DNA of 64,000 bases from positions 62,001 to 126,000 of IMG/VR virus record IMGVR_UViG_3300031951_021456. The stretch is one strand, 5' to 3'. The notes beneath the pieces were generated by a model. That model had not been told where the DNA came from and did no database searches. It saw only the letters and a list, made by a program, of their open reading frames with translations. The translations under genes were made by a program, and so were the position numbers. This document shows, piece after piece, positions 9,430 to 40,251 of this stretch (positions are counted from its first letter, which is position 1; every line of letters begins with the position of its first letter).

Positions 9430-9795
9430 ATGAAAATCTCTACAACACATAAAAGATTTGCAGATCATTTAGATGACCAAATCGCTCTAGAATACCCTGC
9501 ACGTTTTCTAGGACCCAATTGGAAGAATGTATTGAACTTCTGGATCTATTTGGATACTTTGAGTGGTGAAGAATTTAGGTTAATTTTTGATCGTTATTGG
9601 GCTTTAGATGAAGATGCTAGAGTTTCTGCTATAAATAATGCTCATAAAGCGGCTGAAGCGACTATAGATATTCATTATACATATACAACTCGTGGTGCCG
9701 CCCTTACACTTGCACCTGCTTATGCATCCCTTGAACTCATTGGTTCTCATAAGCTAGAGTCTCTTAATTTTCTTCCTTTGTTTCTAAACCAGTGA
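9430..9795 (+). CDS. MKIS-family paralog 1
   Basis: MKISTTHKRFAD..LEYP.RFLGPNWKNVLNFWIYLDTL ... ELIGSHKLESL.FLPLFLN. Confidence 0.85.
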   Translation: MKISTTHKRFADHLDDQIALEYPARFLGPNWKNVLNFWIYLDTLSGEEFRLIFDRYWALDEDARVSAINNAHKAAEATIDIHYTYTTRGAALTLAPAYASLELIGSHKLESLNFLPLFLNQ

Positions 9796-10163
9796 AAATA
9801 TCTTCTTCTCATCAAAAATTTGCAGATCGGTTAAATAACCAAACTGCTCTAGAATACCCTGAACGTTTTCTGGGACCTAATTGGAAGGATGTATTGAATT
9901 TCTGGATTTATTTGGATACTTTGAGTCGTGAAGAGCTTGATAAAGTCTATGAGCATCATCGTGGTTTGAAAGACATACATATATCAAGGCGTCTTGCTTG
10001 GTGTGCTGCTAAGGATACTATAGGTTATGATTATACAAATGCAGCTGCATTTGCATATTATGTTAATTGTTATAATGCCGCTGGATGTCATGCAACCAGT
10101 GAACTCATTGGTTCTCATAAGCTTGAGACCTTGACGTTTTTTCCTTTGTTCATAAATTTTTAA
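9792..10163 (+). CDS. MKIS-family paralog 2
   Basis: Same terminal blocks; GTG start overlapping the paralog 1 stop. Confidence 0.85.
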   Translation: MKISSSHQKFADRLNNQTALEYPERFLGPNWKDVLNFWIYLDTLSREELDKVYEHHRGLKDIHISRRLAWCAAKDTIGYDYTNAAAFAYYVNCYNAAGCHATSELIGSHKLETLTFFPLFINF

Positions 10164-10171
10164 ACTTATTC

Positions 10172-11320
10172 ATGAATTTACTTAATGGCATTGTAGATAT
10201 ATTCCCATCAATAGAACCACAAAATTTTTTGGAAACTCCAAAAAGAATTAAACTTGGATTTGATCCAACAACAGATTTTTTACATTTAGGTCATGCTGTT
10301 CTTTTAAGAAAATTAAGGCAATTTCAAAATGAAAATCATACTCCTGTAATAATTATAGGTGACTTTACTGCAAGAATTGGAGATCCAACAGGAAAATCAA
10401 AAACTAGAAAACAATTAACCAAAGAAGAAGTAGAATTCAATACCAATGAATTTTTGAATACTCTTTCAAATTTTATTGACCCCGAAAAATCTGAAATTAT
10501 TTTTAATTCTAAACATTTAGAACAATTATCTCTATCTACAATTATACAATTACAATCATTGGTAACAGTAAATCAACTCCTAGCGAAAAGGGATTTTCAT
10601 CAAAGATTTGAATTACAAAGCCCTATCAGTTTGCATGAATTTATGTATCCACTACTTCAAGGATATGATAGTCATGTAATATCATCTGAAATAGAACTTG
10701 GAGGAATTGATCAAAAATTTAACATCTCAATGGGTAGAGATGTTCAAAGACATTTCAAAAATAAAAATGAACAAATTGGAATGTTAATGCCAATTTTATG
10801 TGGTACTGATGGTGCCAATAAAATGTCTAAAAGTTTGAATAATGCAATAAAAATTGATGAACATCCTTTAATAATGTTTTCTCAATTGGAAAAAATTCCA
10901 GATAATTTAGTAGATGAATATATTCTTCTACTCACCGACTGTAATTTGGGAGATTTTTCTCCAGATCCTAGAGAAAGGCAAAAACAAATGGCCTTTGAGA
11001 TTGTTTCAGAATTTTATGGTTCTGAAGTTGCTCTAAAGTCTATGAATGAATCTCAACAGATCGTTTTGTCTAATTCAAATATATCAGATGTCCCAGAGAT
11101 AGTTGTTTCACATTTGCAGTTTCCATTACCTCTTGCAACTTTATTGAGAGAAACTAAATTATCAGATAGTTCATCTGCAGCAAGAAGATCAATTCGTTCA
11201 GGTTGTATTAAATTAGATGGGATTAAAATTACAGATGAAAATATTATGGTTGATATAAATGATATTGAAAATAAAATTATAAGAATGTCAAAGAACTCTT
11301 TTCATCGTTTTGTCATGTGA
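10172..11320 (+). CDS. tyrS: Tyrosyl-tRNA synthetase
   Basis: GFDPT..LHLGH (HIGH), IGDFTARIGDPTG, YPLLQGYD, ELGGIDQKFN, KMSKS and a C-terminal S4-like ARRSIRSGCIKLDG. Confidence 0.95.
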   Translation: MNLLNGIVDIFPSIEPQNFLETPKRIKLGFDPTTDFLHLGHAVLLRKLRQFQNENHTPVIIIGDFTARIGDPTGKSKTRKQLTKEEVEFNTNEFLNTLSNFIDPEKSEIIFNSKHLEQLSLSTIIQLQSLVTVNQLLAKRDFHQRFELQSPISLHEFMYPLLQGYDSHVISSEIELGGIDQKFNISMGRDVQRHFKNKNEQIGMLMPILCGTDGANKMSKSLNNAIKIDEHPLIMFSQLEKIPDNLVDEYILLLTDCNLGDFSPDPRERQKQMAFEIVSEFYGSEVALKSMNESQQIVLSNSNISDVPEIVVSHLQFPLPLATLLRETKLSDSSSAARRSIRSGCIKLDGIKITDENIMVDINDIENKIIRMSKNSFHRFVM

Positions 11321-11517
11321 CAGTAGTTAAACTGTCACTATGGAATACACACACTTCACTTCAGTTTGCTAAGATGAAAAAGAAACTTGGAGATTCCCCA
11401 TGTTTAAAAGTAAGTTCTTTCCTTTAATTCTTTATCTTAGTTTACTCTTTATTGGAATTTCTTTTCCCTTTGCTATTCTAATGATTTATCCAGTATCGCC
11501 CACTCACAAAATTTTTT

Positions 11518-12619
11518 ATGAATTCTGACAACTTTATTTTATGTTATTGTGTTACTCTTCTTTTTGGTTTCGTGGGGTTTGTTAGTTATGGTACTATTAA
11601 AAATCAACCAGAATCTCTATATAGAGAAACTTTTAATAGATCTATTTCTTGTCGTGAAACTATAGGACTAAAACAAATAACAAATTTAGACTATATTTGT
11701 GGCAAACTTCCTCAAATCTCCGAATTCCATACACCTTCTAAATAAAATGACACTCAAACTTACTGCAGTACATTTAGTTGATGAGGGATCTTATTTGGTT
11801 AAGTTCCCATATAATAATAAAAATATCTTGGTTTCTGGAGTTGTACCTGAAAGTTGCAATTATGTTGTAGTTTCTAGCCTTGATGAAATTGTAGAACTTT
11901 ATACACCATCAGCAATTCTAACGCATTATACAAATGATAATGATCCAACTCAAACCATAACCCCAACAATCTATCAACAACAAGTTGATATCCTTCGTGC
12001 TAAAGGAAATTATGATGATTTTTCTGGAGAATTAGTTTTCACAAATCTTGATGATGAATATGCATATAAAAAATTCATTAAAACTTGGAACCCTTTTTAT
12101 GTTAAACAAGAAACCATAAAAAGACCAGTTGAAATTGAAATAACTGAAATTCGCACAAATTCTGGAGATCCAGATATTGTATCTTTATGGAACTCTCCTG
12201 CACTAGGAGTTGATCGTAAACTGTATTCAATTAATCGTCTGGATTTAGCTGTCAAAACTTTAAGAGCCATATGTGGTGATAATAATTGGAATCTTGAGAT
12301 CCCAACACATTCTGGAATTTTATATGCAAAAATTAACAATAGTTATGTTTTTAAAGGTAATGAATTTAAATTTGAGACACATTTTATTGGCACTCTTGAA
12401 CAATCAAAGAGTGAAAAAGCAAGAATTATTAAACTGATCAATGATGTAATAGCCATCCGTAATGCATGTAGGAATAAGATTAATAAAAGAACTGCTGGAT
12501 ATGTTTTAGGAAATCTTAGAATCATTAGTTACAGTGTTCAGTCTTCTACTAAATCTAATATATCAATGAAAATTAATGATCTTATTACTGATATTGAGAA
12601 TGAGCTGATTAAGGAATGA
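11518..12619 (+). other. Two hypothetical CDS (11518-11745 with an N-terminal TM segment; about 11747-12619)
   Basis: ORF track; downstream of the class A promoter at 11317. Confidence 0.6.
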
Positions 12620-14450: not shown

Positions 14451-15263
14451 ATGTCTCTCGTAAAAGTTGGTCTAGGTCTTGGTGCTGGCGTCCTGGTTCT
14501 TGCACTTATTTCCGGGCAATGGACAACAATCAATACAGGTGAAAACGGACTTTACACTGGATTTGATGGCCAGGTAAAGAATGAAGTTCTCACCCCCGGT
14601 ATTAAATATGATGGTTTTGGTTCAATTAAAGTCTTCAATACTCGTAAGATTACGGTGACGGCAAATGACCTTCGCCCCAAGACTAAAGATAACACCATCA
14701 TGAAGGAGATGGATGTGACCGTAACCTACAGTATCAATCCCACCTCTCTCTATGATTTCTATACTGGTTATGATATGACCAATCACTCTATCAGCGAAAA
14801 TGGACAAATTCAACTCATGTCCAGTTACATTGCTCGTCTGATTACTTCTGCTGTCAATCAATCTGTGGACGAATTCCCCGCTTTGGTTGTAAACAGCAGC
14901 CTTGGACAGGTTCAAGATACGATTAAGATTAATCTAAGCGAATCTCTAAAGAAAAATGGTCTTGAGGGAAAGATTACCATTGATTCAATCATTGTTGGTA
15001 AAGCTGATCTTCCTGATACTCTTGTTGAATCTGTGAACCGTGTGGTTGCGGCCCAATCTGCAAATAAAGAGCAACAAGTGAAGACTGAAACTGCCCAATT
15101 GAAAGCTGAAGAGAACAAGGCTCTTGCATCTACTGTGACGGCACAATCTCTTGAGTATCAACGTCTTGAAGTTCTTCGTGAAGCGATGAGGAATGGTAGC
15201 ATTCAAAAAATTCTGATTAATGGTGCCAATGTTCTTTCACTTTCTGATAATGTTTTTAAGTGA
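14451..15263 (+). CDS. SPFH/band 7 (prohibitin-like) membrane protein
   Basis: N-terminal TM segment, LTPGIKY, KTKDN..KEMDVTVTYSINP and a C-terminal coiled coil. Confidence 0.85.
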   Translation: MSLVKVGLGLGAGVLVLALISGQWTTINTGENGLYTGFDGQVKNEVLTPGIKYDGFGSIKVFNTRKITVTANDLRPKTKDNTIMKEMDVTVTYSINPTSLYDFYTGYDMTNHSISENGQIQLMSSYIARLITSAVNQSVDEFPALVVNSSLGQVQDTIKINLSESLKKNGLEGKITIDSIIVGKADLPDTLVESVNRVVAAQSANKEQQVKTETAQLKAEENKALASTVTAQSLEYQRLEVLREAMRNGSIQKILINGANVLSLSDNVFK

Positions 15264-16415: not shown

Positions 16416-16511
16416 ATGGAGAAAAAATTCAATCGGAAAAAGAATGAAACTAAAGGACACTTTATGGAGAAAAAATTCAATCGGAAAAAGAATGAAACTA
16501 AAGGACACTTT
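16416..16511. repeat. Perfect 48-bp tandem duplication
   Basis: atggagaaaaaattcaatcggaaaaagaatgaaactaaaggacacttt twice (16416-16463, 16464-16511). Confidence 0.95.
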
Positions 16512-19288
16512 AATGACTGACACATTGATCTGAGGTGTAGTGAGCCAGGTGATATGCTGAACTTGTTCAACACACAACGTTAAAAACCCTAATGAAAATT
16601 GACCTTTCACATTATGTCAGAAAAACTGTAAAAGTTAGATATGCCAATGGCAATGAAGCATTTGGTATAATTACAGTAAGACAATATCTACCTAGTAAAT
16701 TTCTTCAATATAGACTTGTAGATAAAAACCAAAATAGAATTACAGATCATTACGCTTCTGGTAAGTGTTACTATTTTACAGAAAGTTATGACATTGTACA
16801 AATTGAACCTATAACTACTGAAAAAACTATGGATAAACTAGATCTTATGAGCAATTTCTTTAATGCCAAAGATGCACACAAATTGTCAAGTCTTAGTGAT
16901 CCAAATCAACTATTAAAAATAATTCTTGCAGAAATAGAGGAAGTAGCAAGGAATGGAAAATGGAAATATATTACTCGTTCTTATGGTTTTGGCGAAAGTG
17001 TTCTCTATGATATTGAAAACAATTATCCAACTAAAATTAAAGAAGTTTTGAATATGTTGCGTGATTTGGGGTTTACTGCTAAAATTGTAATACATGAAAA
17101 TCAGTTTGTTGATATTTTTCTGCAGGTTACTTGGAATACATAAAAAACTTCTATCATTGTCAAAAAATGCGCAGCCGGAACGGAGAATAAAGTGAAGGAC
17201 ACTTTAACGACTGGCACACACCCATACACTTTGACAAGCGTGCTCCTGCTATGATGAATCTGTTCAGCCAACAAATCTCTAATGATTGGAACAAAGGTTA
17301 GCACAGACTTAGTTGCACGAGTCCAAATTGAAAGGTTTGTAATTTCTATGGATGACCTTAAAGAGTATATGAGAAAAAAATTTAGTGCTGGTGGTTGGTA
17401 TGATGTTGAGTTTCGGATCAATATCTTCTCCCCAGATTCATTAATAATTATATCACGGAAAAGAATAGTTAAGGTGTAAAAGAACATATAGATCTTGTTA
17501 ATTCTGTCTGCAATCCCCACTTCTCATTTATCTAAACAAAATGACTTCTACCACTCCAACTCAAACAATGAAAAAGAAAATTACTAAGGCATTAGTTTGG
17601 AATTTGACCAATATAGTGGAATTGTTTCTCATCTACCAGTGGATTTTTAATGATGTTTATTGGGCAGGAAATCTCATTAAATTTTGGATTGTATTTATTT
17701 TTATTTGTACTCTTGCTGTTATATCTTCACCCGAAGCTGTAAAAAGACAACGTGAAATTGGACGATCTGTTCCTAAAATTTTAGCATATATTTCTTATAT
17801 TTTATCAATTGCTTTGATCGTATCTCAAGGCCATTTTGTTTTTGGTGCACTTTATACACTTTCTGCTTGTTTTGAAATTTATAATTTTGATGGAACTGAT
17901 TAAAATGAAAACCTCTCCTTGGATTGTTGATGGTCATTGTGCAATTCGTGTGTTGAATGGTAGTAATTCTGACCAAATCAAAAATAGGATTGCATTCATT
18001 GAAAAATCTCCTCGTATTCGGTTATCATCCTATACGGGTGATAACGATTATGAAAATTGGGCATATGGCCCTAAAGGAAGCAGTGGTGGAAATCCTGAAA
18101 TAGACTTGACTTATGGATTTGATCCCATTTCTCGTCAATGGTGCGATGAACAATTAACTGCTATTGGTTACACACTAGGAGAATAAAAATGAAACGCAGA
18201 ATCTACAGAAAATATTGGAACCTTATCTTTAAGAAAGTTTTCAATAAGTGTCATATGCATGGCGAAGACATTGAGATTACTTGTTCAAAAATCAGAAAAT
18301 ATAGAAAGTATCTTCAGAGAATGAAGTATCATCATCAACAAAGTGAACAGGATTATCGTAGTGGATATGAGACTTATGGTTATGAAAGTATTGTAGACAT
18401 TGAGACCAGTCTTCTCTACATTTCAGACAGGTTTCATTCTGGATTTCGTTTAGCATGGTTAGTTAATGTTCCTGAAGAAGTTGATAAATTAATGAACACC
18501 TGACCATCTTGTAGAATCTCTCACTTCACACTCATCTAACCATTATGAAAAACTACAGGATTAAAAAAGTAACAGAATCAAATTGTATTATGTATTTTCC
18601 GCAAAGAAAAATTCTTGGATTGTTTTGGATTGATATGTTTAGATATAACCCGTATTATGATGGGTTTGATTCTTATGAAAATGCACATGAAGCACTTTAT
18701 AATGCTATTTGTAAACCTGAAGTTGAATACATTGATGTATATTTTGAAAATGAATGAACACCTGATCATCTGGCACACCTCTATTCACTTTGAGGGGTGT
18801 GCTCGTGCTATGCTGCTTTCAGCAACCAAATTCCAAAATGACTTCTCTTCATCTTGATTCCTCGGTTAGCGGACACCTTTTCAAAGATATTAAAATTTCT
18901 CTTTCTGATGATGAACAAGTTAATATCACACGGTTCATTAAAATTTATTATTTTGGTGATGATGAAATAACAAATGAAGAGATCTTAGACTATCCAAATG
19001 ATGTTGTAGAAGGATACACTGCTGCTCTTGGTAGGTTAAGAGGTGGGTGGTCTACAACACTTTCAATGTCTTTTAATCACAATGGGAATCCTTGTATTAA
19101 AATTTCCGAATATGACATTGCTGGTTATGACGAAATTGACAAAATAAAAGAACAAATAGGTTGTTCTTCAGGTTGTGCAATTGATGTATATTTGCTTAGA
19201 AGAAAATTGGATTGGACACGAGAACAAGAACTTGAGCTAATCAATACTCATAATGCCGGTGTTCCATCACATGTTACATTGCTTTGAT

Positions 19289-20080: not shown

Positions 20081-20437
20081 ATGAAAATCTCTACAACACA
20101 TAAAAGATTTGCAGATCGGTTAAGAGGCCAACCTGCCCTAAAATATCCTGAATATTTCTTAGGACCTAATTGGAAGGATGTATTGAATTTCTGGATTTAT
20201 TTGGATACTTTGAGTGATGATGATATTAGGTTAATTGATATGAGATATTTTGCTTTATGGGATTTAAATACCTTAAGGAATCTTGCTTGGAAAGCTGCTA
20301 AGGATACTATAGGTGTGTATTATGCAGAAGCATCTATTCTCACTCCTACATATGCTGGGACTTATGTAACCAGTGAACTTATTGGTTCTCATAAGCTTAA
20401 GTCTCTTAAGTTTCTCCCTTTGTTTTTAAACCTATGA
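20081..20437 (+). CDS. MKIS-family paralog 3
   Basis: Conserved terminal blocks. Confidence 0.85.
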   Translation: MKISTTHKRFADRLRGQPALKYPEYFLGPNWKDVLNFWIYLDTLSDDDIRLIDMRYFALWDLNTLRNLAWKAAKDTIGVYYAEASILTPTYAGTYVTSELIGSHKLKSLKFLPLFLNL

Positions 20438-20805
20438 AAATCTCTACAACACATAAAAAATTTGCAGATCGGTTATGGGACCAACCTGTTTTAGAATACC
20501 CTGAACGATTTCTAGGACCTAATTGGAAGAATGTATTGAACTTCTGGATTTATTTGGATACTTTGAGTGCTGAGGATACTGATATAATTCATATGCGCTA
20601 TTTGGTTTTAGGTGAAGATGCTATAGTTTATGCTGAAAACCATGATTGGAAAGCTGCTAGGGATACTATAGGTTTTACATATGCAGATGCAACTTGTCAT
20701 ATAACTTTTACATTTCCAAGCATTTATACAACTCTTGAACTCATTGGTTCTCATAATCTTGAGTATTTGACTTTTCTTCCATTGTTTTTAAAACATAAAA
20801 TTTAA
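20434..20805 (+). CDS. MKIS-family paralog 4
   Basis: Conserved terminal blocks; ATGA overlap with paralog 3. Confidence 0.85.
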   Translation: MKISTTHKKFADRLWDQPVLEYPERFLGPNWKNVLNFWIYLDTLSAEDTDIIHMRYLVLGEDAIVYAENHDWKAARDTIGFTYADATCHITFTFPSIYTTLELIGSHNLEYLTFLPLFLKHKI

Positions 20806-22267: not shown

Positions 22268-22627
22268 ATGAAAATCTCTTCAACACATCAACAATTTGCA
22301 AATGATTTAAAAGACCAAACTGCTCTAGAATACCCTGAACGTTTTCTAGGACCCAATTGGAAGAATGTCCTGAACTTCTGGATTTACTTGGATACTTTGA
22401 ATGATGAAGAGAGTGAGTTAATTAATAAGCGTTATTGGGCTTCAGAAGATTTAATGAATTTAACAAATCTTTCTTTTAAAACTGCTGAAGCTATTATAGG
22501 GCATGAAAATGCATCTGTAGCTTGGAGTGTCACTCCTTCATTTTCATCTGCTTGTGCAACCTGTGAACTCATTGGCTCACATAATCTAGAGTCTTTTAAG
22601 TTTCTTCCATTGTTTCTAAATATGTGA
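22268..22627 (+). CDS. MKIS-family paralog 5
   Basis: ATG 22268; conserved blocks; stop codon lies inside the dyad at 22624. Confidence 0.85.
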   Translation: MKISSTHQQFANDLKDQTALEYPERFLGPNWKNVLNFWIYLDTLNDEESELINKRYWASEDLMNLTNLSFKTAEAIIGHENASVAWSVTPSFSSACATCELIGSHNLESFKFLPLFLNM

Positions 22628-23219: not shown

Positions 23220-23594
23220 ATGAAAATCTCAACTTCTCTTAAATATTTTCAAGACAACTATCACTATGATATTCCTAAACTTGGTTCCAATTATAAGAAT
23301 ATTTTAAACTTTTGGATTTTTATTGATACATTAAATATCAACCAATGGAATAAAATTGAAAAAGCTTTTTATCTAATTGAACAAGGTTACAATCTAACAG
23401 AAATTAAACACTTTGCTGCGGATTTAAACGGCTATGCATATGAAATTCAACTTTCCACATGGGGATGTCCATATAAAAAATATAATTTATCACTAAGATC
23501 TCCAATATTTGCAGCTTATGAACTAATTGCAATGGATAAAATTCTTGATGAAGGAAAAACTCTACAGATTTTACCACTATTTTTAGATTTATGA
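23220..23594 (+). CDS. MKIS-family paralog 6 (divergent)
   Basis: MKISTS..LGSNYKNILNFWIFIDTL...YELIA...ILPLFLDL. Confidence 0.7.
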   Translation: MKISTSLKYFQDNYHYDIPKLGSNYKNILNFWIFIDTLNINQWNKIEKAFYLIEQGYNLTEIKHFAADLNGYAYEIQLSTWGCPYKKYNLSLRSPIFAAYELIAMDKILDEGKTLQILPLFLDL

Positions 23595-27673: not shown

Positions 27674-28042
27674 GTGAAAATCTCCACCACCCATCAAAAA
27701 TTTGCAGATCAGTTAGGCGACCAAACTGCTCTAGAATACCCTGAACGTTTTCTAGGACCTAATTGGAAGGATGTTTTGAACTTCTGGATTTATTTGGACA
27801 CTTTAAGCGCCGAAAAGCGTAAGATAGTTAGTAAGCGCTATAGTGCTTTAGCTGATACTTCAGTAATAAGTTTAACTCATGGTTCTCACTGGGTTCTTAC
27901 ATGGAATGCTGCTCAAGATATTATAGGTAATGAATGTGTATGGTCAGCTTTCCGGGTGATTGGGAGCAGTGTGAACATTGAACTCATCGCTTCACATAAA
28001 CTTGAGTCTCTTAAGTTTCTTCCCCTGTTTTTGAATTTATGA
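27674..28042 (+). CDS. MKIS-family paralog 7
   Basis: GTG start; conserved blocks. Confidence 0.85.
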   Translation: MKISTTHQKFADQLGDQTALEYPERFLGPNWKDVLNFWIYLDTLSAEKRKIVSKRYSALADTSVISLTHGSHWVLTWNAAQDIIGNECVWSAFRVIGSSVNIELIASHKLESLKFLPLFLNL

Positions 28043-28847: not shown

Positions 28848-28913
28848 CTGTCCAAAGGTGACAGACTACAAAGGTACTCAATGTTATGATATGTATTATT
28901 GATTCGGAAACTA

Positions 28914-30324: not shown

Positions 30325-30594
30325 ATGTCTTCTTTCTCTAACGCTCTTCAGCAACAAGATCCTTCTGCTGTTGTGTATCTGGATGTGAACGGTAACGTGA
30401 TCGCTCTGATGCCCAACGAATACGAGGGGAAAACCCTGACCCAACTTTTCACCGACTTTGGTTCCCGACTCGGCACTAACGTTTCCCGCGTTACAAGCTT
30501 CACTATCAATGGTCAACAAGTGGGCGCCACCGCCGTTGTCCGCCCAGGCGAAACCGTTCGCGGCAACGTTCAAACTGACAGCAAGCAAGCCTGA
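30325..30594 (+). CDS. Ubiquitin-like (beta-grasp) protein
   Basis: Beta-beta-alpha-beta-beta pattern (VVYLDV, VIAL, GKTLTQLFTDFGSRLG, SFTING, VVRPGETVR) with a free tail TDSKQA; first gene of a JAB-E2-E1 operon. Confidence 0.75.
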   Translation: MSSFSNALQQQDPSAVVYLDVNGNVIALMPNEYEGKTLTQLFTDFGSRLGTNVSRVTSFTINGQQVGATAVVRPGETVRGNVQTDSKQA

Positions 30595-30610
30595 TCATCC
30601 TTCAGATTAA

Positions 30611-31774
30611 TTGACCATGAGTCTACCTAGTTTCTGGGTAGACTCTATTTCTTTATCTTTTATTATGACATCTTCTAGATTCCTAAATCTTTATGCTAAT
30701 TATCATGGTGATCAAACCGTTCTTGAGAATCCTGAGCAAGTTCTAGGACCAAATTGTAAAAGTATTTTAGACTTTTGGGAGAGCCTAGATGAAAGTGTTC
30801 TTAGAACTGAATTTGATGGTTCATTTGAGATCTATTCCTGTCCATGGGGGAAATATCTTAGGCCTTGCCGGGATCCTCTAGCTAATTCAGTAATAACAAA
30901 AGAAAATTATGATAAGTTTGAAGTCGCAGAAAATGTCAATAAAATTCCATCAGATATTTGGACTGCATGGATTCTTCTCTGTTTTCATTTTGTGGATAAA
31001 GTTCCAACAAAAATGGAAGTTCTTGTTCGTTTCTTGAGAAATGAAGAAAATCCATCTCAATTTATGGCAGTCGTCCCTAAACAATCTGTTACAGGGGTAT
31101 CAGTAAAAGTTGGAAACTTTAATGATTGCTGTAACCTCTTAACTGGAGAAAAATACACATCATATCCACCAGAAGGTTGGATTCCATGTGGTTCTAGTCA
31201 TAGCCATAATACATTGTTTTCTGGCTGGAGTGATGAAGATAATAAATATGAAATTCCAGATCCAGGGATTCATATTACGGTTGGGGAAATCAACTCAACA
31301 AAACGAACATATCAAATTGCCGCTTCAGTGACAGGAAATTTGAAAAGATTCAAGATTAATTATACTCATCTCATTGATACAACATTTGATGAAGACTCTA
31401 AATTTCATAAAAATGTATTAGAATATGTTGAAATTAGTACAACAAAATATCAATCATGGCCTACGAATGTTAATTATAAACCCCTGCAGCGAAAACTTCC
31501 TCCAGCCAAAACAACTTTCAGCAATATTGAAGAATATCGTGAGTTTATGTATGGGGAATTCACTGATTTTGATGCCTATAAAAAAATTAGTAGAGATCCA
31601 TTTCATTATAGCGATTCGTTTAGATATGTAACTAATACATTAGAGGTTCATCAAATAGCTGATAGCATTGAAGATTTTATCAAAGAGAATCGCAATGATG
31701 CTGATCAACTAGAAGAGTTGCAAAATACTCTGTCTTCATGTCTTATTGATCTTCAACTTGAACTAAACTCATGA
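30611..31774 (+). CDS. JAB/JAMM/MPN+ metalloprotease (deubiquitinase-like) with N-terminal MKIS-family segment
   Basis: E136...H197-S-H199-x7-S207-x2-D210 (GSSHSHNTLFSGWSDED), VVPKQSV and PGIHITVG. Numbering is from the TTG at 30611; the true start may be ATG 30617 or 30665. Confidence 0.9.
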   Translation: MTMSLPSFWVDSISLSFIMTSSRFLNLYANYHGDQTVLENPEQVLGPNCKSILDFWESLDESVLRTEFDGSFEIYSCPWGKYLRPCRDPLANSVITKENYDKFEVAENVNKIPSDIWTAWILLCFHFVDKVPTKMEVLVRFLRNEENPSQFMAVVPKQSVTGVSVKVGNFNDCCNLLTGEKYTSYPPEGWIPCGSSHSHNTLFSGWSDEDNKYEIPDPGIHITVGEINSTKRTYQIAASVTGNLKRFKINYTHLIDTTFDEDSKFHKNVLEYVEISTTKYQSWPTNVNYKPLQRKLPPAKTTFSNIEEYREFMYGEFTDFDAYKKISRDPFHYSDSFRYVTNTLEVHQIADSIEDFIKENRNDADQLEELQNTLSSCLIDLQLELNS

Positions 31775-32592
31775 CATCCATTCTTTTTCCCGAAACGCTT
31801 CCTTCTGGGCTTGTTAATCTATTTCCACCAAAAATCAGTGCAATTTCATATAATTATTCTGGAGATGGATTGCTTTTAAGGGCTCATATGAAAGATAAAT
31901 TTAGACGTTTGCAACAAGATGGTGAATATGCTGCAAACTTTCTTATGTGTCCCATGATTTTTCAGCAAACTTTGGAAATTAATAACCCTGAAACTAGATT
32001 TCAAGTAAGAGAAACTCCCAGCCATTATCCAGAAACCAGAGTATATTTACAGGGAACAAAAATAGTAGATAATAATATTTTTACAACAGTAAAGGATAAT
32101 ATGTCAAATGTATGTGATAGCACTTTTTTAGTTTGCTGGGGTGGAAATTTTAATGTAAAGAGTATAAAAACAATGAAAGGATTTATTGATCTTTTCTTTA
32201 ATAGTTATTTTAATGGTGATTATACTTCACCAAAGGCATTAAGGACATCTGAAGAAAATTGTATTGAGATTAGAGGTGAAATTGCAGAAGATTCTTTTGA
32301 GGCCACTAATTATAAGCTCATTTCAAAGGATGCAAATGCAATCTATACTATTCATAGGCATGATAATCCTTCCATTTTCTTTTGGCTTAAATCTGCCGGA
32401 TTTAATCCAATTGTAGAAAATTCTGACATTATGTTAGTTCCACTTAAGAGTGTTATCCTAACGGATAATGGAATTGATTATCCTGGATTTGTAACACCTA
32501 TTGATCTTTGCCGTAAGAAATGGTTCATTCTCCCTGATGGGAAATTTGTTGGGCAGATGTCCAGTTCACAGACTGTCCGTAACCCCACGTAA
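31771..32592 (+). CDS. Prokaryotic E2 ubiquitin-conjugating-like enzyme (family D / PRTRC protein B-like)
   Basis: SNVCDSTFLVC122WGGN followed by LFFNSYFNGDY matches the N[VT]..[IV]CWG...FF.S.FN.D pattern; ATGA overlap with the JAB gene. Confidence 0.75.
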   Translation: MTSILFPETLPSGLVNLFPPKISAISYNYSGDGLLLRAHMKDKFRRLQQDGEYAANFLMCPMIFQQTLEINNPETRFQVRETPSHYPETRVYLQGTKIVDNNIFTTVKDNMSNVCDSTFLVCWGGNFNVKSIKTMKGFIDLFFNSYFNGDYTSPKALRTSEENCIEIRGEIAEDSFEATNYKLISKDANAIYTIHRHDNPSIFFWLKSAGFNPIVENSDIMLVPLKSVILTDNGIDYPGFVTPIDLCRKKWFILPDGKFVGQMSSSQTVRNPT

Positions 32593-32639
32593 AATCCCTA
32601 AAACCTCCTAGATTAAAAAAGCCTACAACACACTCAAAA

Positions 32640-33353
32640 ATGTTTGATAAAGTTTATCTGCTCGGAATTGGCGGGGGTGGAAGTCACCTTGCTCCAGTTC
32701 TCGTCCAAACTCTCCGCTCACACCCAAAAACTTCATATAGTACAATCACCTTTATTGATGGTGATAAATTTGAGAAAAAAAACCAGAGCCGACAGCTTAT
32801 GGAGCCTAGCGATGTTGGCCTTAACAAGGCTACTTCAGTTGCTAGAATCTGTGAAGATCGTGGATTTTCTGATGTATATTCAATTGAAGATTATGCAAAC
32901 TTTGAGAATCTAGTTCCACTTCTTGAAGATGCTCAGTCTCCACTTGTGATTGCATGTGTAGATAACAATGCAACCAGGGCAGCTATCATTGATGCGATCC
33001 AAAAAGTTTGCATTGATGATAACAAGAAGAACTTCTTCTTTATCACACCTGGTAATAGTGATGCGACCGAAGACCCTAAGGGTCAAGTTTGTTGGTGGGG
33101 GGCAATCAACGGGAAAACTTATGGTCAAAACCCCAAAGAATATGATCTAGACATTCAAAATCCTGATGATTTTATTCCAAGGATTGGTGGATGTATGGAT
33201 ATGAGCGAATCTCATCCACAAGTTCTTTCAGCAAATCATCTTGCGGTGTCTCTCACCCTTTCTCTCGTTCAAACACTGTTGGATGAGAAATTGGATCATC
33301 GTAAGTCTCAAATTCGCTTCAACTGCTACAATCTTACCACTGCCATTTCCTGA
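32640..33353 (+). CDS. E1/ThiF-family adenylating enzyme
   Basis: LLGIGGGGS (GxGxxG), IDGDKFEKKNQSRQ, GLNKA, ACVDN, PGN..GQV and candidate catalytic C185 (GGCMDMSESHPQ..AN). Confidence 0.92.
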   Translation: MFDKVYLLGIGGGGSHLAPVLVQTLRSHPKTSYSTITFIDGDKFEKKNQSRQLMEPSDVGLNKATSVARICEDRGFSDVYSIEDYANFENLVPLLEDAQSPLVIACVDNNATRAAIIDAIQKVCIDDNKKNFFFITPGNSDATEDPKGQVCWWGAINGKTYGQNPKEYDLDIQNPDDFIPRIGGCMDMSESHPQVLSANHLAVSLTLSLVQTLLDEKLDHRKSQIRFNCYNLTTAIS

Positions 33354-33358
33354 AAATC

Positions 33359-33829
33359 ATGTCTGACAATCCTCAAAACGTTAAAGTCAATGCAAGAGTT
33401 CTTAAATTTGATCAACTTCTTCAAGGCATTGAAGAATACGCAAGTTCAATCCGTACTCGTACAGATTCTGCTCTGAGCGAGGATAACATCTGCTCCCGTA
33501 TTGAAGAGATCTTTGGGGAAGAAGAATCTTTCAATAGGCTAGTTGCAGCTATTGTTACTCGTATTGGCATTAATAGCATCGTTAATGGTGTTGTTCGCCA
33601 AACGCAAGGAGACATTAACGAGAAGATTGATGCTACCATTAGCTCAAAACTCTCAGAAGAACCCCTACTTTCCACTGTAAATAGGCTCATTCAAATGCAC
33701 GCCAATGGTCAGGAAATTTCAATTCCTGATATCAATCAAAATCGCAAAATTGAAGACATTCCATTGGATAGTCCAGAAAATATTGCAGAGGTCTGTAGGC
33801 TTCTAGCTGGGGCTGACGCAATTCTCTGA
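33359..33829 (+). CDS. Alpha-helical hypothetical protein, last gene of the Ubl operon
   Basis: Starts 5 nt after the E1 stop and ends just before the terminator. Confidence 0.7.
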   Translation: MSDNPQNVKVNARVLKFDQLLQGIEEYASSIRTRTDSALSEDNICSRIEEIFGEEESFNRLVAAIVTRIGINSIVNGVVRQTQGDINEKIDATISSKLSEEPLLSTVNRLIQMHANGQEISIPDINQNRKIEDIPLDSPENIAEVCRLLAGADAIL

Positions 33830-33874: not shown

Positions 33875-34255
33875 ATGAAAATCTCCATTTCACATCAACA
33901 TTTTGCAAATTGGTTAAAGGCTCAAGATGCTCTAACTAATCCAGAAAAATATCTTGGCCCCAAATGGAAAGATGTCCTGAACTTTTGGATTTATTTGGAT
34001 TCAGAAGAGTCTGAGTGGGATGAGCGGCGTTGCACCGCTACTCTGCGTGCCGCTTATAATATTATAGGCTCTGAGTGGGATGAGCGGCGTTGCATCGCTA
34101 CTCTGCGTGCCGCTTATAATATTATAGGCTCTGAGTATGGATATGCAGCTTTTAATGCTCATGTTGGTTATGCTGAAGGGCATGCAACCTGTGAACTTAT
34201 CGCTTCACATAAACTTGAGTCTCTCAGTTTTCTTCCCCTGTTCTTGACCCCATGA
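33875..34255 (+). CDS. MKIS-family paralog 9 with internal 20-aa duplication
   Basis: ATG 33875; SEWDERRC(T/I)ATLRAAYNIIG twice; stop codon inside the dyad at 34252. Confidence 0.85.
   Translation: MKISISHQHFANWLKAQDALTNPEKYLGPKWKDVLNFWIYLDSEESEWDERRCTATLRAAYNIIGSEWDERRCIATLRAAYNIIGSEYGYAAFNAHVGYAEGHATCELIASHKLESLSFLPLFLTP
34010..34136. repeat. 60-bp tandem duplication (1 mismatch) plus 7-bp partial third copy
   Basis: 34010-34069 versus 34070-34129. Confidence 0.95.
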
Positions 34256-34571: not shown

Positions 34572-35508
34572 ATGTCTTTAAGTACCATTGAACGTCTATC
34601 TCCATTTTCTTCAAGTTTCACTTGGGATGATTACACAAATGAACTCTATCGGTTTTCTGATGATTATGGATATCTTTCGGTTGAACAGATGAAAAATGAA
34701 ATAGAACGGTTTAGGATGTTCAGTTTTACTGATAAAATTAATTTTACAATGACTGTTGAGGATTTCGTTGACTTCTTATTTGATGCAAACTCCAATCACA
34801 CCTGATCCTAATTATCTTTACAACTTATATGAAGAAGAAGAACCAGAGGACCAACCGGAAGATGCCGAGTTTGATGATGAATCAAACTGAAGACATTTTT
34901 CTAAATGATGATTTTGGTTCACAGCTTCATGAATTTTTAGATCCAGAACTTTTACAAATTTTAGACAATTATGAATTTGACGAAAACTGACTTTAATGAT
35001 ATTCTCAAAACCCTTGATGAAGCTAAAACCGCAGATGAACTCTTAACTGCACTTAATAAAATTGGACACAATGAAAACTGTCCCAATGAGGCTTTACAAG
35101 ATCAACCAATGACCTATTCTTGAAATGTAACTACCACTTACACCATGATCAATCTCAAACCAACTGAAAATACCATGAGCACCTCTGAAGAGGCTGCTCT
35201 TATTCTCTCTGATATTTTTGATGGAGATCTTGTCGCACAACAAGCAGCCATTGAAGAATTCTCTCTGTTTACTGATGAAGACATTTTGGACCAAGAAGAT
35301 GCTCTTTATGATCGTTATCTCCCTGTCAGGGAGGTTTCTTCTATCCAAGAGTAATTCCCGCTATAGCATTCATGCAAATGGGTGTATAGTAAATGTAGGA
35401 GACTTAAATTCAGCCTACATGATTGCATACAGAATGGCCAGCTCTTTTGGCCATTCTTTCATTTATGACAATCTTTTCAATAAAACAATTGATGAGTATT
35501 TTGAATGA
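34572..35508 (+). other. Cluster of very small, mostly acidic ORFs (34572-34805, 34783-34890, about 34874-34990, about 35174-35354, others)
   Basis: Examples: MQTPITPDPNYLYNLYEEEEPEDQPEDAEFDDESN and MSTSEEAALILSDIFDGDL... Confidence 0.5.
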
Positions 35509-35909
35509 TCTATTCTAAAAGACATTTAGCATTTTCTGAGTTATTTCCATCAGCATTAACACAACCAGAAGAATTTATAGGTCGTAACTGGAAAAATGTT
35601 TTAAATATTTGGATTTTCCTGGATACTATAGATTGTGCTCAATTACATAGAATATATTCAATCTGCTTTCATCCATGTTATGATTATAAATATAGATCAC
35701 TATTGTCTCAATATTCTTTTGAAGAATGCGAATATAGCAGTGATATTTATAATTTAACTCCTAGTGGATTTGATTATCTTGTATTAGAGCTAATATTAGA
35801 ACAAACATTGATGGAAAATCAAATACCCTTGAGGTATCTTCCAAATCTATGCGATTTTATGCCACTTTTTAAATCGTCCATGGATGGCTCAAATAGCTTT
35901 CAGCCATAG
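35505..35909 (+). CDS. MKIS-family paralog 10 (divergent)
   Basis: ALTQPEEFIGRNWKNVLNIWIFLDTI...LELI...YLP. Confidence 0.7.
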   Translation: MIYSKRHLAFSELFPSALTQPEEFIGRNWKNVLNIWIFLDTIDCAQLHRIYSICFHPCYDYKYRSLLSQYSFEECEYSSDIYNLTPSGFDYLVLELILEQTLMENQIPLRYLPNLCDFMPLFKSSMDGSNSFQP

Positions 35910-35936: not shown

Positions 35937-36512
35937 ATGAAACTTTTCACTCAAGTTTTCCACTATCGGGTGTTACAAGAGCTTTCACTTGATGAACTGT
36001 CAAGTTTTAAGGAACACAATAGACTTAGAGTTTTTCATCATAAGGGGACAAGTTGTGTAACTTGTGGTAAAATCGGAACTAGACTCATTCAAGGTGCTGG
36101 TCGGGGTTCAAAACATTGGGATATTTATACAGATGATCTATATCCTTTAACTGTGGATCACATTATTCCAAAGAGCTTAGGTGGAAGTGATGATTTAGAA
36201 AATTTGCAACCAATGTGCGCAGGATGCAACTTCAGAAAAGGAAACGGCAAACCTTATAATCCTGGGCCGAAACCATGGACCCCTAAAGGATACCAACCTT
36301 GTTCATTGCTTGAAGACTTTAACATTTTAATTGGTAAAACTGTCTGGAAGAGAAAAAGATCTAATGGAGGCTTTAAGAAATCAATATATCAATTAGGAAC
36401 TGTTGATACTATTTTTATGGAAGATAATTCGCAACACTACGCCAGAATAACCGATAACCCTCACTCCAAATTTACAATTAAAGCCCTTTACATTCCATTG
36501 AAAGAACAATGA
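35937..36512 (+). CDS. HNH endonuclease
   Basis: CVTC, TVDHIIPKSLGGSDDLENLQPMCAGCN.RKG. Confidence 0.9.
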   Translation: MKLFTQVFHYRVLQELSLDELSSFKEHNRLRVFHHKGTSCVTCGKIGTRLIQGAGRGSKHWDIYTDDLYPLTVDHIIPKSLGGSDDLENLQPMCAGCNFRKGNGKPYNPGPKPWTPKGYQPCSLLEDFNILIGKTVWKRKRSNGGFKKSIYQLGTVDTIFMEDNSQHYARITDNPHSKFTIKALYIPLKEQ

Positions 36513-37464: not shown

Positions 37465-38040
37465 ATGAATCTCAATCAAGCTGCTCAAAACATGGTTTCT
37501 TTCTGGGAAGATCCAAGGAACATTCCATTCAAGGGCCAATTAATCTCTTTAGATGGCGATACACCATGCATGTGTGCACAAGGCCAAACCCTCTTTAAAG
37601 AGGGCGATTATTCGGTTAATCAGCTAGAGATGATGCCTCAAGAAGTAGCAGATAAAGAAACTGCACGAATCTTAGGAATCTCAGTTTCTCATTCTAGGCT
37701 CTTGCGTAGAATTAATGATTCTTGTCCAGATGCTCCACAAGATGTTCTAACTAATCCAGAAAAATATCTAGGGCATAATTATGAAGCTGTACTGAAATTT
37801 TGGTATCTTTTGGATACTTTGAGTCGTGAAGATTTTGATATAGTTGATAAGCGTTGTTATGATATAGTTTCTGCTTTCTCAGCAGCTTATGCTATTATAG
37901 GCTCTGAGTATGCAAATGCAGCTTTTGATGCTGCCATTGGTCTTGTTGCAGGTTATGCAACTCTTGAACTCATCGGCTCACATAAACTTCAAGAACATGT
38001 TTTTCTTCCTATGTTCTCTTTTACTCAACTTCAGCCATGA
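37465..38040 (+). CDS. MKIS-family paralog 11 with N-terminal CMCAQGQ domain
   Basis: ATG 37465; DVLTNPEKYLG.NYEAVLKFW.LLDTL...ELIGSHKL. Confidence 0.85.
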   Translation: MNLNQAAQNMVSFWEDPRNIPFKGQLISLDGDTPCMCAQGQTLFKEGDYSVNQLEMMPQEVADKETARILGISVSHSRLLRRINDSCPDAPQDVLTNPEKYLGHNYEAVLKFWYLLDTLSREDFDIVDKRCYDIVSAFSAAYAIIGSEYANAAFDAAIGLVAGYATLELIGSHKLQEHVFLPMFSFTQLQP

Positions 38041-38754: not shown

Positions 38755-38762
38755 TCGCACCT

Positions 38763-38786: not shown

Positions 38787-38805
38787 GCTCTTCAAACAAC
38801 CTCTC

Positions 38806-39162
38806 ATGAAAATCTATCTTGACGATGATGCCAACTACAGAATCACTCCTGATGGTTGGCACAGAACATTTACAGCATCAGAAACCATAGAATTACTAAA
38901 AACCGAACAAGTAACACATCTAAGTCTAGATCATGATCTAGGACCACTTGAAGCTGGAACGGGTTATGATGTTGTGTGCTGGATTGAACAAATGGTTATT
39001 GAGAAACAATTTAATCCACCAATTATGACAATTCATTCAGCGAATCCGGTTGGAAGACAAAAAATGCAAGCAGCTATACAGATGATTTACCACCACTTCA
39101 AAGTAACTCAGCCAACATTGTGGGACGAGTTTATTTCAAACTTACAAACCTCAAATTCATGA
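38806..39162 (+). CDS. Cyclic-phosphate processing receiver domain (cREC) protein
   Basis: MKIYLDDD, LSLDHDLG, TGYDVV and IHSANPVGRQKM. Confidence 0.8.
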   Translation: MKIYLDDDANYRITPDGWHRTFTASETIELLKTEQVTHLSLDHDLGPLEAGTGYDVVCWIEQMVIEKQFNPPIMTIHSANPVGRQKMQAAIQMIYHHFKVTQPTLWDEFISNLQTSNS

Positions 39163-39608
39163 CATACTCTAAGATACATCAAGCAGTTTCAAAAAAACTT
39201 AATACCCCTGAAGTTTTAATTGACCCAGAGAAATTTTTAGGAGAAAATTTCCAAATTGTCCTGGAATTTTGGAAATTTATTGATACACTGCTTCCTAAAG
39301 ATTTTGAGCGTATTTCATCTAGATATAATGAATTACATGAAAGGGAAGGTGATCTTGCAAGAAAGCTTGATTTCTGTTTAGAAGGTATCAACACACCAGT
39401 TAGAATAGCATGTTTTGATTCTGCCTATAATAACTACATGTACTCAACGTCTACATATAGAGCTGTTGCCTTTTCTATAGTTTATGCCACTCATGAATTA
39501 ATTAATTACTATAATAGCGATAATAGCGATAAACAATTGTACTTCCTGCCTTTGTTTGAAGAATTTTTGGTTGAGATTAATAAGAACTCCTTATCTAAAA
39601 CCCCTTGA
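39159..39608 (+). CDS. MKIS-family paralog 12 (divergent)
   Basis: VLIDPEKFLGENFQIVLEFWKFIDTL...YATHELI...YFLPLF. Confidence 0.75.
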   Translation: MTYSKIHQAVSKKLNTPEVLIDPEKFLGENFQIVLEFWKFIDTLLPKDFERISSRYNELHEREGDLARKLDFCLEGINTPVRIACFDSAYNNYMYSTSTYRAVAFSIVYATHELINYYNSDNSDKQLYFLPLFEEFLVEINKNSLSKTP

Positions 39609-39654
39609 CAACTTAAGAGATTTCCATTATTCTTAAATCAATCGCCCAACACCA

Positions 39655-40251
39655 ATGAATCTCAATCAAGCGGCCCAAAACATGGTTTCCTTCTGGGAGG
39701 ATCCGAGAAACATTCCATTTAAGTGCAAATTAATATCTTTTACTGATAGTGGTAAACCTTGCATGTGTGCACAAGGACAAACACTCTTTAAAGAAGGTGG
39801 GTATTCTGTGGATCAGCTAAAGGAGATGCCTCAAGAAGTAGCAGATAAAGAAACTGCACGAATCTTAGGAATCTCAGTTTCTCATTCTTGGCTCTTGCGG
39901 CATATCAACGATTCTAGACTAGGTGCTCCGCAAGATGTTCTAACTAATCCAGAAAAATATCTTGGTCCCAATTGGGAAGCTGTACTGAAATTTTGGCATC
40001 TTTTGGATACTTTGAGTATGGACGAACTTAAGTGGGAAAAAGTTGGAATCCGCTTTTGTGCTTTAGATGAGTTTTATAGATGTTATTCTGAGAATGCAGT
40101 TTTAAAAGCTGCTGAAGATAATATAGAGATTTTCCATGCAAAAAACGTTTTCAATGATTGTTGTCGTGGTGTAGGTTTGGCAACCCTTGAAATCATTGGG
40201 TCTCATAAACTTCAAGAACATGTTTTTCTTCCTATGTTCTCCAACCTTTGA
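39655..40251 (+). CDS. MKIS-family paralog 13 with N-terminal CMCAQGQ domain
   Basis: Close copy of the 37465 gene at both ends, different in the middle of the family domain. Confidence 0.85.
   Translation: MNLNQAAQNMVSFWEDPRNIPFKCKLISFTDSGKPCMCAQGQTLFKEGGYSVDQLKEMPQEVADKETARILGISVSHSWLLRHINDSRLGAPQDVLTNPEKYLGPNWEAVLKFWHLLDTLSMDELKWEKVGIRFCALDEFYRCYSENAVLKAAEDNIEIFHAKNVFNDCCRGVGLATLEIIGSHKLQEHVFLPMFSNL

What the first reader, a model, noticed from the sequence alone, without database searches (positions are those of the whole stretch)
9430..40251. Thirteen-member paralog family with constant ends and a hypervariable core
Seen: 13 genes share an N-terminal block (LEYPERFLGPNWKxVLNFWIYLDTL) and a C-terminal block (ELIGSHKLxxLxFLPLF). 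In the closest members these blocks are near-identical in DNA, while the roughly 50-aa middle differs in every copy. There are three tandem pairs, two copies with an extra CMCAQGQ domain, one with an internal duplication, and the N-block is fused to the JAB protease. Inference: a recombination-diversified effector or adaptor family (constant scaffold plus variable target-binding surface). It could supply substrate receptors to the phage Ubl system, by analogy with F-box/ankyrin expansions in eukaryotic viruses.
Basis: partly seen in the sequence, partly recalled or inferred. Interest (0 to 1): 0.78.

Follow-up and report, generated by a model that had tools for sequence, protein, structure and literature searches.

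The report
Forty-copy diversifying phage protein family
A large T4-like phage known only from metagenomes carries at least 40 copies (13 in this window) of a small helical protein of unknown function and unmatched fold, with ends held constant and a middle that diversifies, which is what a battery of specificity variants for dealing with the host would look like.

Summary
All 13 genes exist. So do the three tandem pairs, the two long forms with the CMCAQGQ extension, the internal duplication (60 nt x 2.1) and the N-block at the start of a JAB peptidase.

The window is part of a 248-kb T4-like phage contig. That contig holds at least 40 members in arrays of up to five. A second 243-kb phage holds about 30.

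The family has 426 clusters at 50% identity, all from metagenomes and all unannotated. It has no Pfam, PHROG, NCBIfam, PADLOC or PDB match. It was not found in cultured phages or in 185,579 bacterial species genomes.

AlphaFold models are confident (pLDDT 96.6 and 92) and all-alpha, with no fold match (best Z 4.0).

The ends are kept by purifying selection (omega about 0.25), not by DNA homogenisation, because synonymous divergence is uniform along the gene. The middle has omega 0.65, and a site class with omega 2.3 is supported.

Gene-conversion tracts, mosaics, slippage duplications and lineage-specific bursts are all present.

The link to the Ubl operon is weak. Only this phage and its close strain have the N-block on the JAB, and the operon occurs elsewhere with no family member nearby.

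Most likely this is a diversifying binder family for host interaction.

The parts
9430..9795 (+). family member, 121 aa, first of tandem pair 1
   Evidence: seed of the HMM, E 5e-60; alignment A1
9792..10163 (+). family member, 123 aa, GTG start overlapping the upstream stop (pair 1)
20081..20437 (+). family member, 118 aa, first of pair 2
20434..20805 (+). family member, 123 aa, ATGA overlap with the upstream copy (pair 2)
22268..22627 (+). family member, 119 aa, single; the start is the ATG at 22268 (the listed ORF runs from a TTG at 22217)
23220..23594 (+). divergent family member, 124 aa
   Evidence: E 6e-14, 3.5e-26 with the broad HMM
27674..28042 (+). family member, 122 aa, GTG start, first of pair 3; lies between the RNA ligase and the kinase
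   Evidence: family members at the corresponding place in L049
28039..28392 (+). family member, 117 aa (pair 3); the protein modelled
   Evidence: AlphaFold2 pLDDT 96.6, all-alpha
33875..34255 (+). family member, 126 aa, with an internal tandem duplication
   Evidence: Tandem Repeats Finder: 60 nt x 2.1 copies, 98% identical, at 34010-34136
35505..35909 (+). divergent family member, 134 aa
   Evidence: E 1.6e-12 for the N-block only; full length E 2.3e-22 with the broad HMM
37465..38040 (+). long form, 191 aa: CMCAQGQ/HTH-like N-extension plus the family domain (the listed ORF runs from a TTG at 37411)
39159..39608 (+). divergent family member, about 149 aa from the ATG (the ORF runs from a GTG at 39120)
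   Evidence: E 2.7e-16, 4.5e-33
39655..40251 (+). long form, 198 aa, with the CMCAQGQ extension; modelled
   Evidence: AlphaFold2 pLDDT 92, pTM 0.87
30665..30802 (+). family N-block (about 45 aa) forming the N-terminus of the JAB peptidase
   Evidence: HMM E 4e-9 / 5e-10; translation; present only here and in P0261 among 77 JAB homologues
30665..31774 (+). JAB/MPN peptidase carrying the N-block (context)
   Evidence: H-S-H-x7-S-x2-D motif seen in the translation; many homologues carry PF14464
30325..30594 (+). 89-aa probable ThiS-like Ubl (context)
   Evidence: nearest Atlas clusters carry ThiS, score 0.90; conserved upstream of the JAB in other phages
31771..32592 (+). 273-aa probable Prok-E2_D-like E2 (context)
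   Evidence: nearest Atlas clusters carry PF14460, score 0.91; no direct Pfam hit
32640..33353 (+). E1-like ThiF adenylyltransferase (context)
   Evidence: Pfam PF00899 E 1.4e-11; BilD model 5.8e-7
33359..33829 (+). 156-aa conserved fifth gene of the operon, function unknown (context)
   Evidence: syntenic in L027, L047, L048 and L049
33840..33858 (+). GC-rich hairpin followed by a T-run, between the operon and member 33875
   Evidence: terminator-like site

Best explanation
This is a phage-restricted, lineage-expanded multigene family. It encodes small (about 120 aa), soluble, mildly acidic, all-alpha proteins built on one scaffold.

Anatomy. The N-terminal 45 residues (helices 1-2 and the invariant LGPNW..VLNFW turn) and the C-terminal 25 residues (ELIGSHKL..FLPLF) are capping elements held by purifying selection. 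The three helices in between carry the variable positions, some of which are positively selected. In some relatives they carry a variable number of Ala-rich AAxxAAxx repeats.

Evolution. New copies arise by tandem and segmental duplication. They are reshuffled by gene conversion, change length by slippage-type internal duplication, and are lost or fused between close strains. This is birth-and-death evolution.

Function (inferred, not shown). The copies are specificity variants of one protein-binding module. They are made in the infected cell and each recognises a different, variable target, most plausibly host defence or takeover targets. The constant caps supply the fold and perhaps a common docking surface.

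The N-cap on the JAB peptidase of this one phage lineage is a recent graft. It hints that the cap can act as a portable docking piece, but it does not show that the family works through the Ubl pathway.
For: Shown:
- 13 copies in the window and at least 40 in the genome, in arrays of up to 5 with overlapping stop and start codons.
- 426 clusters at 50% identity, all unannotated.
- Found in no cellular genome and no cultured phage.
- Confident single-domain helical models with no fold or sequence match.
- Omega is 0.27/0.65/0.25 for N/middle/C, with uniform pS.
- M2a beats M1a with 2dlnL 30.7. About 11% of sites have omega 2.3, and 10 of the 12 candidate sites lie in the middle.
- Gene-conversion tracts at global p<=0.003.
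- Between strains at about 94% ANI, family genes are among the fastest-evolving proteins in their regions (pN 0.04-0.11, omega 0.37-0.79) and show indels, a chimera and a mosaic.
- Separate clades of copies in each phage.
- Five copies have short internal tandem duplications.
- Median pI is 5.7 and there are no hydrophobic segments.

Inferred: that the family acts as a binder, and that its targets are host proteins.
Against: - No partner, expression time or location is known.
- Mean omega in the middle is below 1. The site-model test can give false positives when paralogues recombine and the alignment of the variable part is uncertain.
- Other small accessory ORFs in the same regions evolve almost as fast.
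- Fusions to an RHH domain and to an HTH-like extension could point to gene regulation rather than host-protein binding.
- I could not map the variable sites onto the model surface, because model coordinates are not returned.
Confidence: 0.5

Rival explanations
1. The paralogues are interchangeable substrate receptors for the phage-encoded Ubl conjugation system. The constant N-block docks on the E2, E1, JAB or Ubl, and the variable helices pick the protein to be modified or de-modified.
For: - The N-block is the N-terminus of the JAB peptidase in this phage and its close strain.
- The operon Ubl-JAB-E2_D-E1-p156 is real and conserved.
- Family members flank the operon here, in the second large phage and in L049.
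- Several contigs carry both the family and the operon.
Against: - The fusion is present in only 2 of 77 JAB homologues. It is absent from the second phage with about 30 copies and from L049.
- In L047 and L048 the operon has no family member within 10 kb.
- The family sits at about 17 places around the genome.
- A terminator-like hairpin separates the operon from member 33875.
- With more than 40 copies of the same 5' sequence in one genome, an accidental recombinational graft is easy.
Confidence: 0.13
2. Packaged internal or ejected proteins, as with the T4 internal proteins. The constant N-terminus targets the proteins into the prohead, and the variable body acts in the next host cell after injection.
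For: - The phage is T4-like, with a gp23 capsid protein, a prohead core protein and an S77 prohead protease.
- The extreme N-terminus is strongly conserved (M1, S4, H7).
- T4 internal proteins are likewise polymorphic behind a constant leader (own knowledge).
Against: - The C-terminus is conserved as well, and the N-block is an integral part of the folded domain.
- I saw no conserved L/I-x-E protease site at the block boundary in the wider family, whose consensus there is ALTNP (judged by eye).
- Most copies lie among nucleotide- and RNA-metabolism genes rather than in the head module.
Confidence: 0.1
3. Regulatory modules. The domain is a partner-switching or sensor domain of DNA-binding regulators. 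The short forms would be truncated decoys or anti-repressors acting on the long forms.
For: - The long forms have an HTH-like ETARILGISVSHS motif whose last helix is helix 1 of the family domain.
- One relative is fused to a ribbon-helix-helix domain: PF01402, 24.7 bits against a cutoff of 20.5.
Against: - Short forms lack the first HTH helix and are acidic.
- Only a few of 426 clusters carry such fusions.
- Forty regulators in one phage would have no precedent.
Confidence: 0.1
4. A non-adaptive expansion. The duplicates spread by recombination and carry no individual function; the variable middle simply drifts.
For: - Mean omega in the middle is 0.65, and about a third of sites fit omega = 1.
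- Copies are gained, lost and truncated between close strains.
Against: - All 40 reading frames are intact and the ends have omega about 0.25.
- The family persists across 426 clusters and in corresponding genome positions in divergent phages.
- The models are confident across the variable helices.
- M2a is preferred over the nearly neutral model.
Confidence: 0.07

Closest known systems
Expanded multigene families of large eukaryotic viruses (poxvirus ankyrin/PRANC, giant-virus F-box/BTB/ankyrin, ASFV MGF360/505)
   Same: Dozens of paralogues in tandem arrays, lineage-specific bursts, a constant part plus a diversifying part, and gain and loss between close strains. The comparison itself rests on own knowledge.
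   Different: No sequence or fold similarity. The host is a bacterium. Each protein is one small domain rather than a docking domain plus repeats. No docking partner is known.
T4 internal proteins IPI/IPII/IPIII (constant capsid-targeting leader, polymorphic body)
   Same: A T4-like phage, a constant N-terminus, a variable body and small size.
   Different: The C-terminus is constant too. The constant N-part is 45 aa and structural. There are 40 copies instead of three. Packaging was not tested.
Bacterial Bil and related Prok-E2/E1/JAB/Ubl operons (Hor et al. bioRxiv 10.1101/2023.09.04.556158; Chambers et al. 10.1101/2023.09.26.559546)
   Same: The neighbouring operon has the same parts list: a ThiS-like Ubl, a JAB, an E2-like protein and a ThiF E1.
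   Different: It is phage-encoded, has a fifth conserved gene (p156), and its E2 is of the Prok-E2_D type according to language-model neighbours only. The paralogue family is not a described component of any such operon.
Diversity-generating retroelement targets
   Same: A conserved scaffold with a localised variable region.
   Different: There is no adenine bias in the mismatches: 29% against 29% base content. The arrays are 99.98-100% identical between samples.
Immunity protein/antitoxin-type small helical binders (e.g. the PT1-PIM1 complex, PDB 8ows)
   Same: This is the best structural match of the family domain: Z 4.0, 80 residues, for the long form, and Z 2.5 for the short form. One relative has an RHH fusion, as many antitoxins do.
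   Different: The Z-score is within the noise for helical proteins by the tool's own note. I did not establish which protein chain A is. There is no adjacent toxin gene.

Membership tests
Any curated family (Pfam-A, PHROGs v4, NCBIfam, PADLOC) | significant profile match | tested here: not met
   No hit at E<=0.1 for short, long or divergent members apart from sub-threshold noise. The PDB profile search returned nothing at E<=10.
F-box / ankyrin / PRANC viral adaptors | F-box or ankyrin repeat recognisable in the sequence | tested here: not met
   No Pfam match. The fold search gives only one ankyrin protein, at E 5.4 and TM 0.15.
F-box / ankyrin / PRANC viral adaptors | the constant domain docks on a ligase component | not testable with these tools
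   No complex prediction or binding assay is available.
DGR variable protein | mismatches confined to template adenines | tested here: not met
   A-fraction of mismatches is 0.28-0.29, equal to the A content of 0.29.
DGR variable protein | the variable region differs among otherwise identical genomes | tested here: not met
   Contigs from three other samples are 99.98-100% identical through the arrays.
DGR variable protein | a reverse transcriptase and template repeat nearby | not tested
   Only selected ORFs were scanned with Pfam.
T4-type internal proteins | the constant part is limited to a short N-terminal leader that ends at a prohead-protease site | tested here: not met
   The constant N-block is 45 aa and folded into the domain, and the C-block is also constant.
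T4-type internal proteins | presence in the virion | not testable with these tools
   Needs proteomics.
Death-fold (DED/PYD/CARD) | six-helix bundle match above background | tested here: not met
   About 15 death-fold chains appear, but at Z 2.0-2.8 with 54-67 residues aligned.
JAB/MPN peptidase (30665-31774) | JAMM motif H-x-H-x7-S-x2-D | tested here: met
   HSHNTLFSGWSDED is seen in the translation.
JAB/MPN peptidase (30665-31774) | profile match to Prok-JAB | tested here: inconclusive
   The protein itself has no Pfam hit, but 22 of its 76 homologues carry PF14464.
E1 / ThiF (32640-33353) | ThiF adenylation domain | tested here: met
   PF00899 E 1.4e-11; BilD and E1-E2 models; MccB in the PDB at E 1e-3.
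Prok-E2_D (31771-32592) | profile match to an E2 family | tested here: inconclusive
   No Pfam or PADLOC hit. Language-model neighbours carry PF14460 at score 0.91, and 10 of the 10 best agree.
ThiS/MoaD-type Ubl (30325-30594) | beta-grasp family match and a C-terminal Gly-Gly | tested here: inconclusive
   No Pfam hit. Atlas neighbours carry ThiS at score 0.90. The protein ends in ...RGNVQTDSKQA, not GG, so it would need processing.

The most novel reading that the evidence does not exclude
The family is a phage-encoded library of exchangeable target-recognition subunits. They plug through the shared N-cap into the phage's own Ubl-E2-E1-JAB machinery. That would be a bacterial-virus counterpart of F-box/cullin adaptor expansions, letting one conjugation or deconjugation system be aimed at dozens of host proteins.
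Probability: 0.13. Interest if true: 0.95.

Novelty: new variant of a known kind. Interest (0 to 1): 0.75.

Why it matters
Paralogue expansions of this size are a hallmark of large eukaryotic viruses in arms races with host immunity. To my knowledge they have not been described for phages. Here at least 40 copies take up about 6% of the DNA and roughly a tenth of the genes.

This gives a new, confidently modelled fold, a natural series of about 40 sequence variants on one scaffold, and closely related strains that differ in copy content. That is ready material for finding what large T4-like freshwater phages need to recognise in their hosts.

If the caps dock on the adjacent Ubl machinery, it would be the first adaptor system for a prokaryotic-virus ubiquitin-like pathway.

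Tried and rejected
- **Family libraries.** Pfam, PHROGs, NCBIfam and PADLOC gave nothing for the family. PDB searches by sequence and by profile gave nothing.
- **Fold searches, short form.** Foldseek against PDB, AFDB clusters and BFVD gave nothing below E 1. VIA-wide gave a best Z of 3.4. The best Atlas shape match (TM 0.64) is an unannotated, mostly viral cluster.
- **Fold searches, long form.** Best Z was 4.0.
- **ESM Atlas feature neighbours.** NACHT C-terminal helical and SNaCT domains scored 0.6-0.69, below the level the tool calls a lead.
- **Cultured phages.** tBLASTn with a family member and with the JAB found nothing.
- **Bacterial genomes.** The first attempt failed because the alignment was not conserved enough. 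The second found no relative.
- **Promoters.** The sigma-70 scan found no more sites than chance, and the T4 late motif TATAAATA is not enriched or placed before family genes.
- **Upstream sequence of member 33875.** I first read it as a relic of a C-block. It is the 3' arm and T-run of a hairpin.
- **N-block on the second phage's JAB.** I first took a tBLASTn alignment to mean the second phage's JAB also had the N-block. Reading the translation showed it does not.
- **Positive selection by counting.** NG86 counting gave pN/pS of 1.2-1.5 in the middle. The maximum-likelihood estimate with codon frequencies is 0.65, so the counting result was not used as evidence of positive selection.
- **DGR idea.** Rejected.
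- **Literature.** Searches found no description of the family.

Full report
**What is there**

A motif scan and an HMM built from the eight closest copies recover 13 + strand ORFs between 9430 and 40251, plus the N-terminus of the 387-aa ORF at 30611. The alignment shows the N-block (..ALEYPERFLGPNWKxVLNFWIYLDTLS) and the C-block (ATxELIGSHKLxxLxFLPLF). Within the window, S4, G28, L35, W38, D42, E102, I104, P116 and F118 are invariant.

- Three pairs have overlapping stop and start codons.
- Two long forms carry the CMCAQGQ extension.
- A 60-nt unit is repeated 2.1 times at 34010-34136.
- The N-block opens the JAB protein when it is read from the ATG at 30665.

One detail is overstated. Within the window the blocks are 65-90% (N) and 68-83% (C) identical in DNA, which is not near-identical.

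**Genome context**

The window is positions 62001-126000 of a 247,932-bp IMG/VR contig. The phage is T4-like. A strain at about 94% ANI carries a gp23 capsid protein, a T4-type prohead core protein and an S77 prohead protease. The window itself has a tail-fibre protein, TyrRS, helicases and an RNA ligase. The nearest cultured phages are Synechococcus phages B3 and B23, with a UvrD-type helicase at 56% identity. Neither the family, the E1 nor the JAB was found in either by tBLASTn.

**Size and range of the family**

In the 195 kb of this genome that I could read there are at least 40 full copies. They lie at about 17 places, in arrays of up to five, on both strands. A second phage of 243 kb has about 30 hits.

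The profile finds 208 proteins in the 90% collection and 426 representatives at 50% identity. All are unannotated and come from metagenomes. None was found in one genome for each of 185,579 bacterial and archaeal species. There is no match in Pfam, PHROGs, NCBIfam, PADLOC or PDB sequences.

**Structure**

With a 125-sequence alignment, AlphaFold2 gives a single all-alpha domain with pLDDT 96.6 and pTM 0.89. The helices are at residues 5-14, 31-41, 46-57, 62-77 and 79-100, with a short C-terminal helix on the LPLF motif.

The long form gives pLDDT 92 and pTM 0.87. Its extension has two short strands and four helices packed on the family domain.

Neither model has a fold match. Foldseek finds nothing below E 0.4, and VIA-align gives a best Z of 3.4 and 4.0, far below the tool's own background for helical proteins. 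The proteins are mildly acidic (median pI 5.7) and not hydrophobic.

**How it evolves**

- *Counting method.* For 25 core paralogues, NG86 gives pS 0.38/0.36/0.45 and pN 0.12/0.43/0.17 for N/middle/C. Synonymous divergence is uniform, so the constant ends are held by selection on the protein, not by homogenisation.
- *Maximum likelihood.* A GY94+F3x4 model gives omega 0.27, 0.65 and 0.25.
- *Site model.* My own implementation reproduces IQ-TREE's M0 (omega 0.427). It prefers M2a over M1a with 2dlnL 30.7: 53% of sites at omega 0.14, 36% at 1 and 11% at 2.3. Sites with posterior above 0.9 are columns 57, 64, 86, 87 and 119, and 10 of the 12 sites above 0.5 lie in columns 46-96. Recombination and alignment uncertainty can inflate this test.
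- *Recombination.* It is real. A GENECONV-like permutation test finds two globally significant identical tracts. One covers the N-block, between copies at 8 kb and 179 kb.
- *Close-strain comparison.* Against the strain at about 94% ANI, one copy has lost its N-block and is fused to another ORF. An extra zinc-ribbon-fused copy is present. A C-block duplication is absent. One copy has a different middle type from a point inside the gene. Orthologues have pN 0.04-0.11 and omega 0.37-0.79, at the top of their regions.
- *Tree.* Each phage has its own clade of copies, about 28 in one and about 12 in the other. Older subfamilies, such as the long forms, are shared.
- *Slippage.* Five copies carry short internal tandem duplications. 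Long forms in other phages differ by the number of Ala-rich AAxxAAxx repeats.
- *Not a DGR and not phase variation.* Contigs from other samples are 99.98-100% identical through the arrays. Mismatches show no adenine bias.

**The Ubl operon and the proposed link**

The genes at 30325-33829 are:
- an 89-aa protein whose nearest Atlas clusters carry ThiS;
- a JAB peptidase, identified by the JAMM motif and by homologues with PF14464;
- a 273-aa protein whose neighbours carry Prok-E2_D;
- a ThiF E1;
- a conserved 156-aa protein.

The same five genes, in the same order, occur in at least four other phage contigs.

Evidence for a link is the N-block on the JAB and the presence of family members beside the operon here, in the second phage and in L049.

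Evidence against a link:
- Only 2 of 77 JAB homologues have the N-block: this phage and its close strain. All the others start with an acidic tail before ILRTxxDG.
- The second phage's JAB also lacks it.
- L047 and L048 have the operon with no family member within 10 kb.
- A hairpin with a T-run lies between p156 and member 33875.

With 40 copies of the same 5' sequence in the genome, a recombinational graft is an easy accident, although it has been kept in two strains.

**Other clues**

One relative is fused to a ribbon-helix-helix domain. The long forms have an HTH-like motif that ends in family helix 1. Other relatives have unrelated N- or C-extensions or are tandem double domains. The pair between the RNA ligase and the kinase has counterparts at the same position in a divergent phage.

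**Verdict**

The family is a new, phage-only, massively expanded set of small helical proteins with conserved caps and a diversifying centre. It evolves by duplication, gene conversion, slippage and probably positive selection.

The most likely role is a set of specificity variants of one binding module used against variable host targets (confidence about 0.5). The Ubl-adaptor idea remains possible but rests on a single young fusion (about 0.13).

**Limits**
- Co-occurrence could be judged only within 10 kb of the operon.
- No interaction could be tested.

Noticed in passing
L027:7161-7397 (second phage, IMGVR_UViG_3300042560_001323): A group I intron (Rfam RF00028, 54.8 bits, E 5e-13) interrupts the JAB gene directly after the GSSHSH of the catalytic JAMM motif. 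The frame resumes at about 7437.
   Followed up: partly
window 10172-11320: The phage encodes a tyrosyl-tRNA synthetase (tRNA-synt_1b E 4e-67, with an S4 domain). Elsewhere in the same genome lineage there is an AspRS-like gene (L045 2967-4856). The window has no tRNA genes.
   Followed up: no
window 26086-29603: An RNA-repair-like cassette: RNA ligase, an AAA_33/PNK-like kinase and a metallophosphatase. A family pair is inserted between the ligase and the kinase. The same order is seen in L049.
   Followed up: partly
window 30619-30645: A 12-bp stem hairpin followed by a T-rich run lies between the Ubl gene and the JAB start. It could set a higher Ubl-to-enzyme expression ratio.
   Followed up: no
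window 16416-16512: A perfect 48-nt x 2.0 tandem repeat outside the family.
   Followed up: no
window 14451-15263: An SPFH/Band_7 protein (E 7e-17). It is also found near the Ubl operon in L047 and L048.
   Followed up: no
L049:3359-4555: An IS605 OrfB/TnpB-like gene (Cas12f1-like_TNB) sits inside a related phage contig.
   Followed up: no
P0330 (615 aa): A JAB homologue fused to a ThiF domain in one protein.
   Followed up: no
window 29582-30124: A 180-aa protein just upstream of the Ubl gene has a weak DnaG/Toprim-like PADLOC hit (E 0.013). In L049 this position is occupied by a family member.
   Followed up: no
window 35937-36512 and L049:13417-13893: An HNH endonuclease gene lies downstream of the Ubl operon in both phages.
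   Followed up: no
genome positions 9187-9624, 32353-32778, 51036-51470, 212025-212492 (outside the window; L005, L012, L002, L015): Further family copies carry short in-frame tandem duplications, for example a doubled C-block and AAGDAGFY x4.
   Followed up: partly
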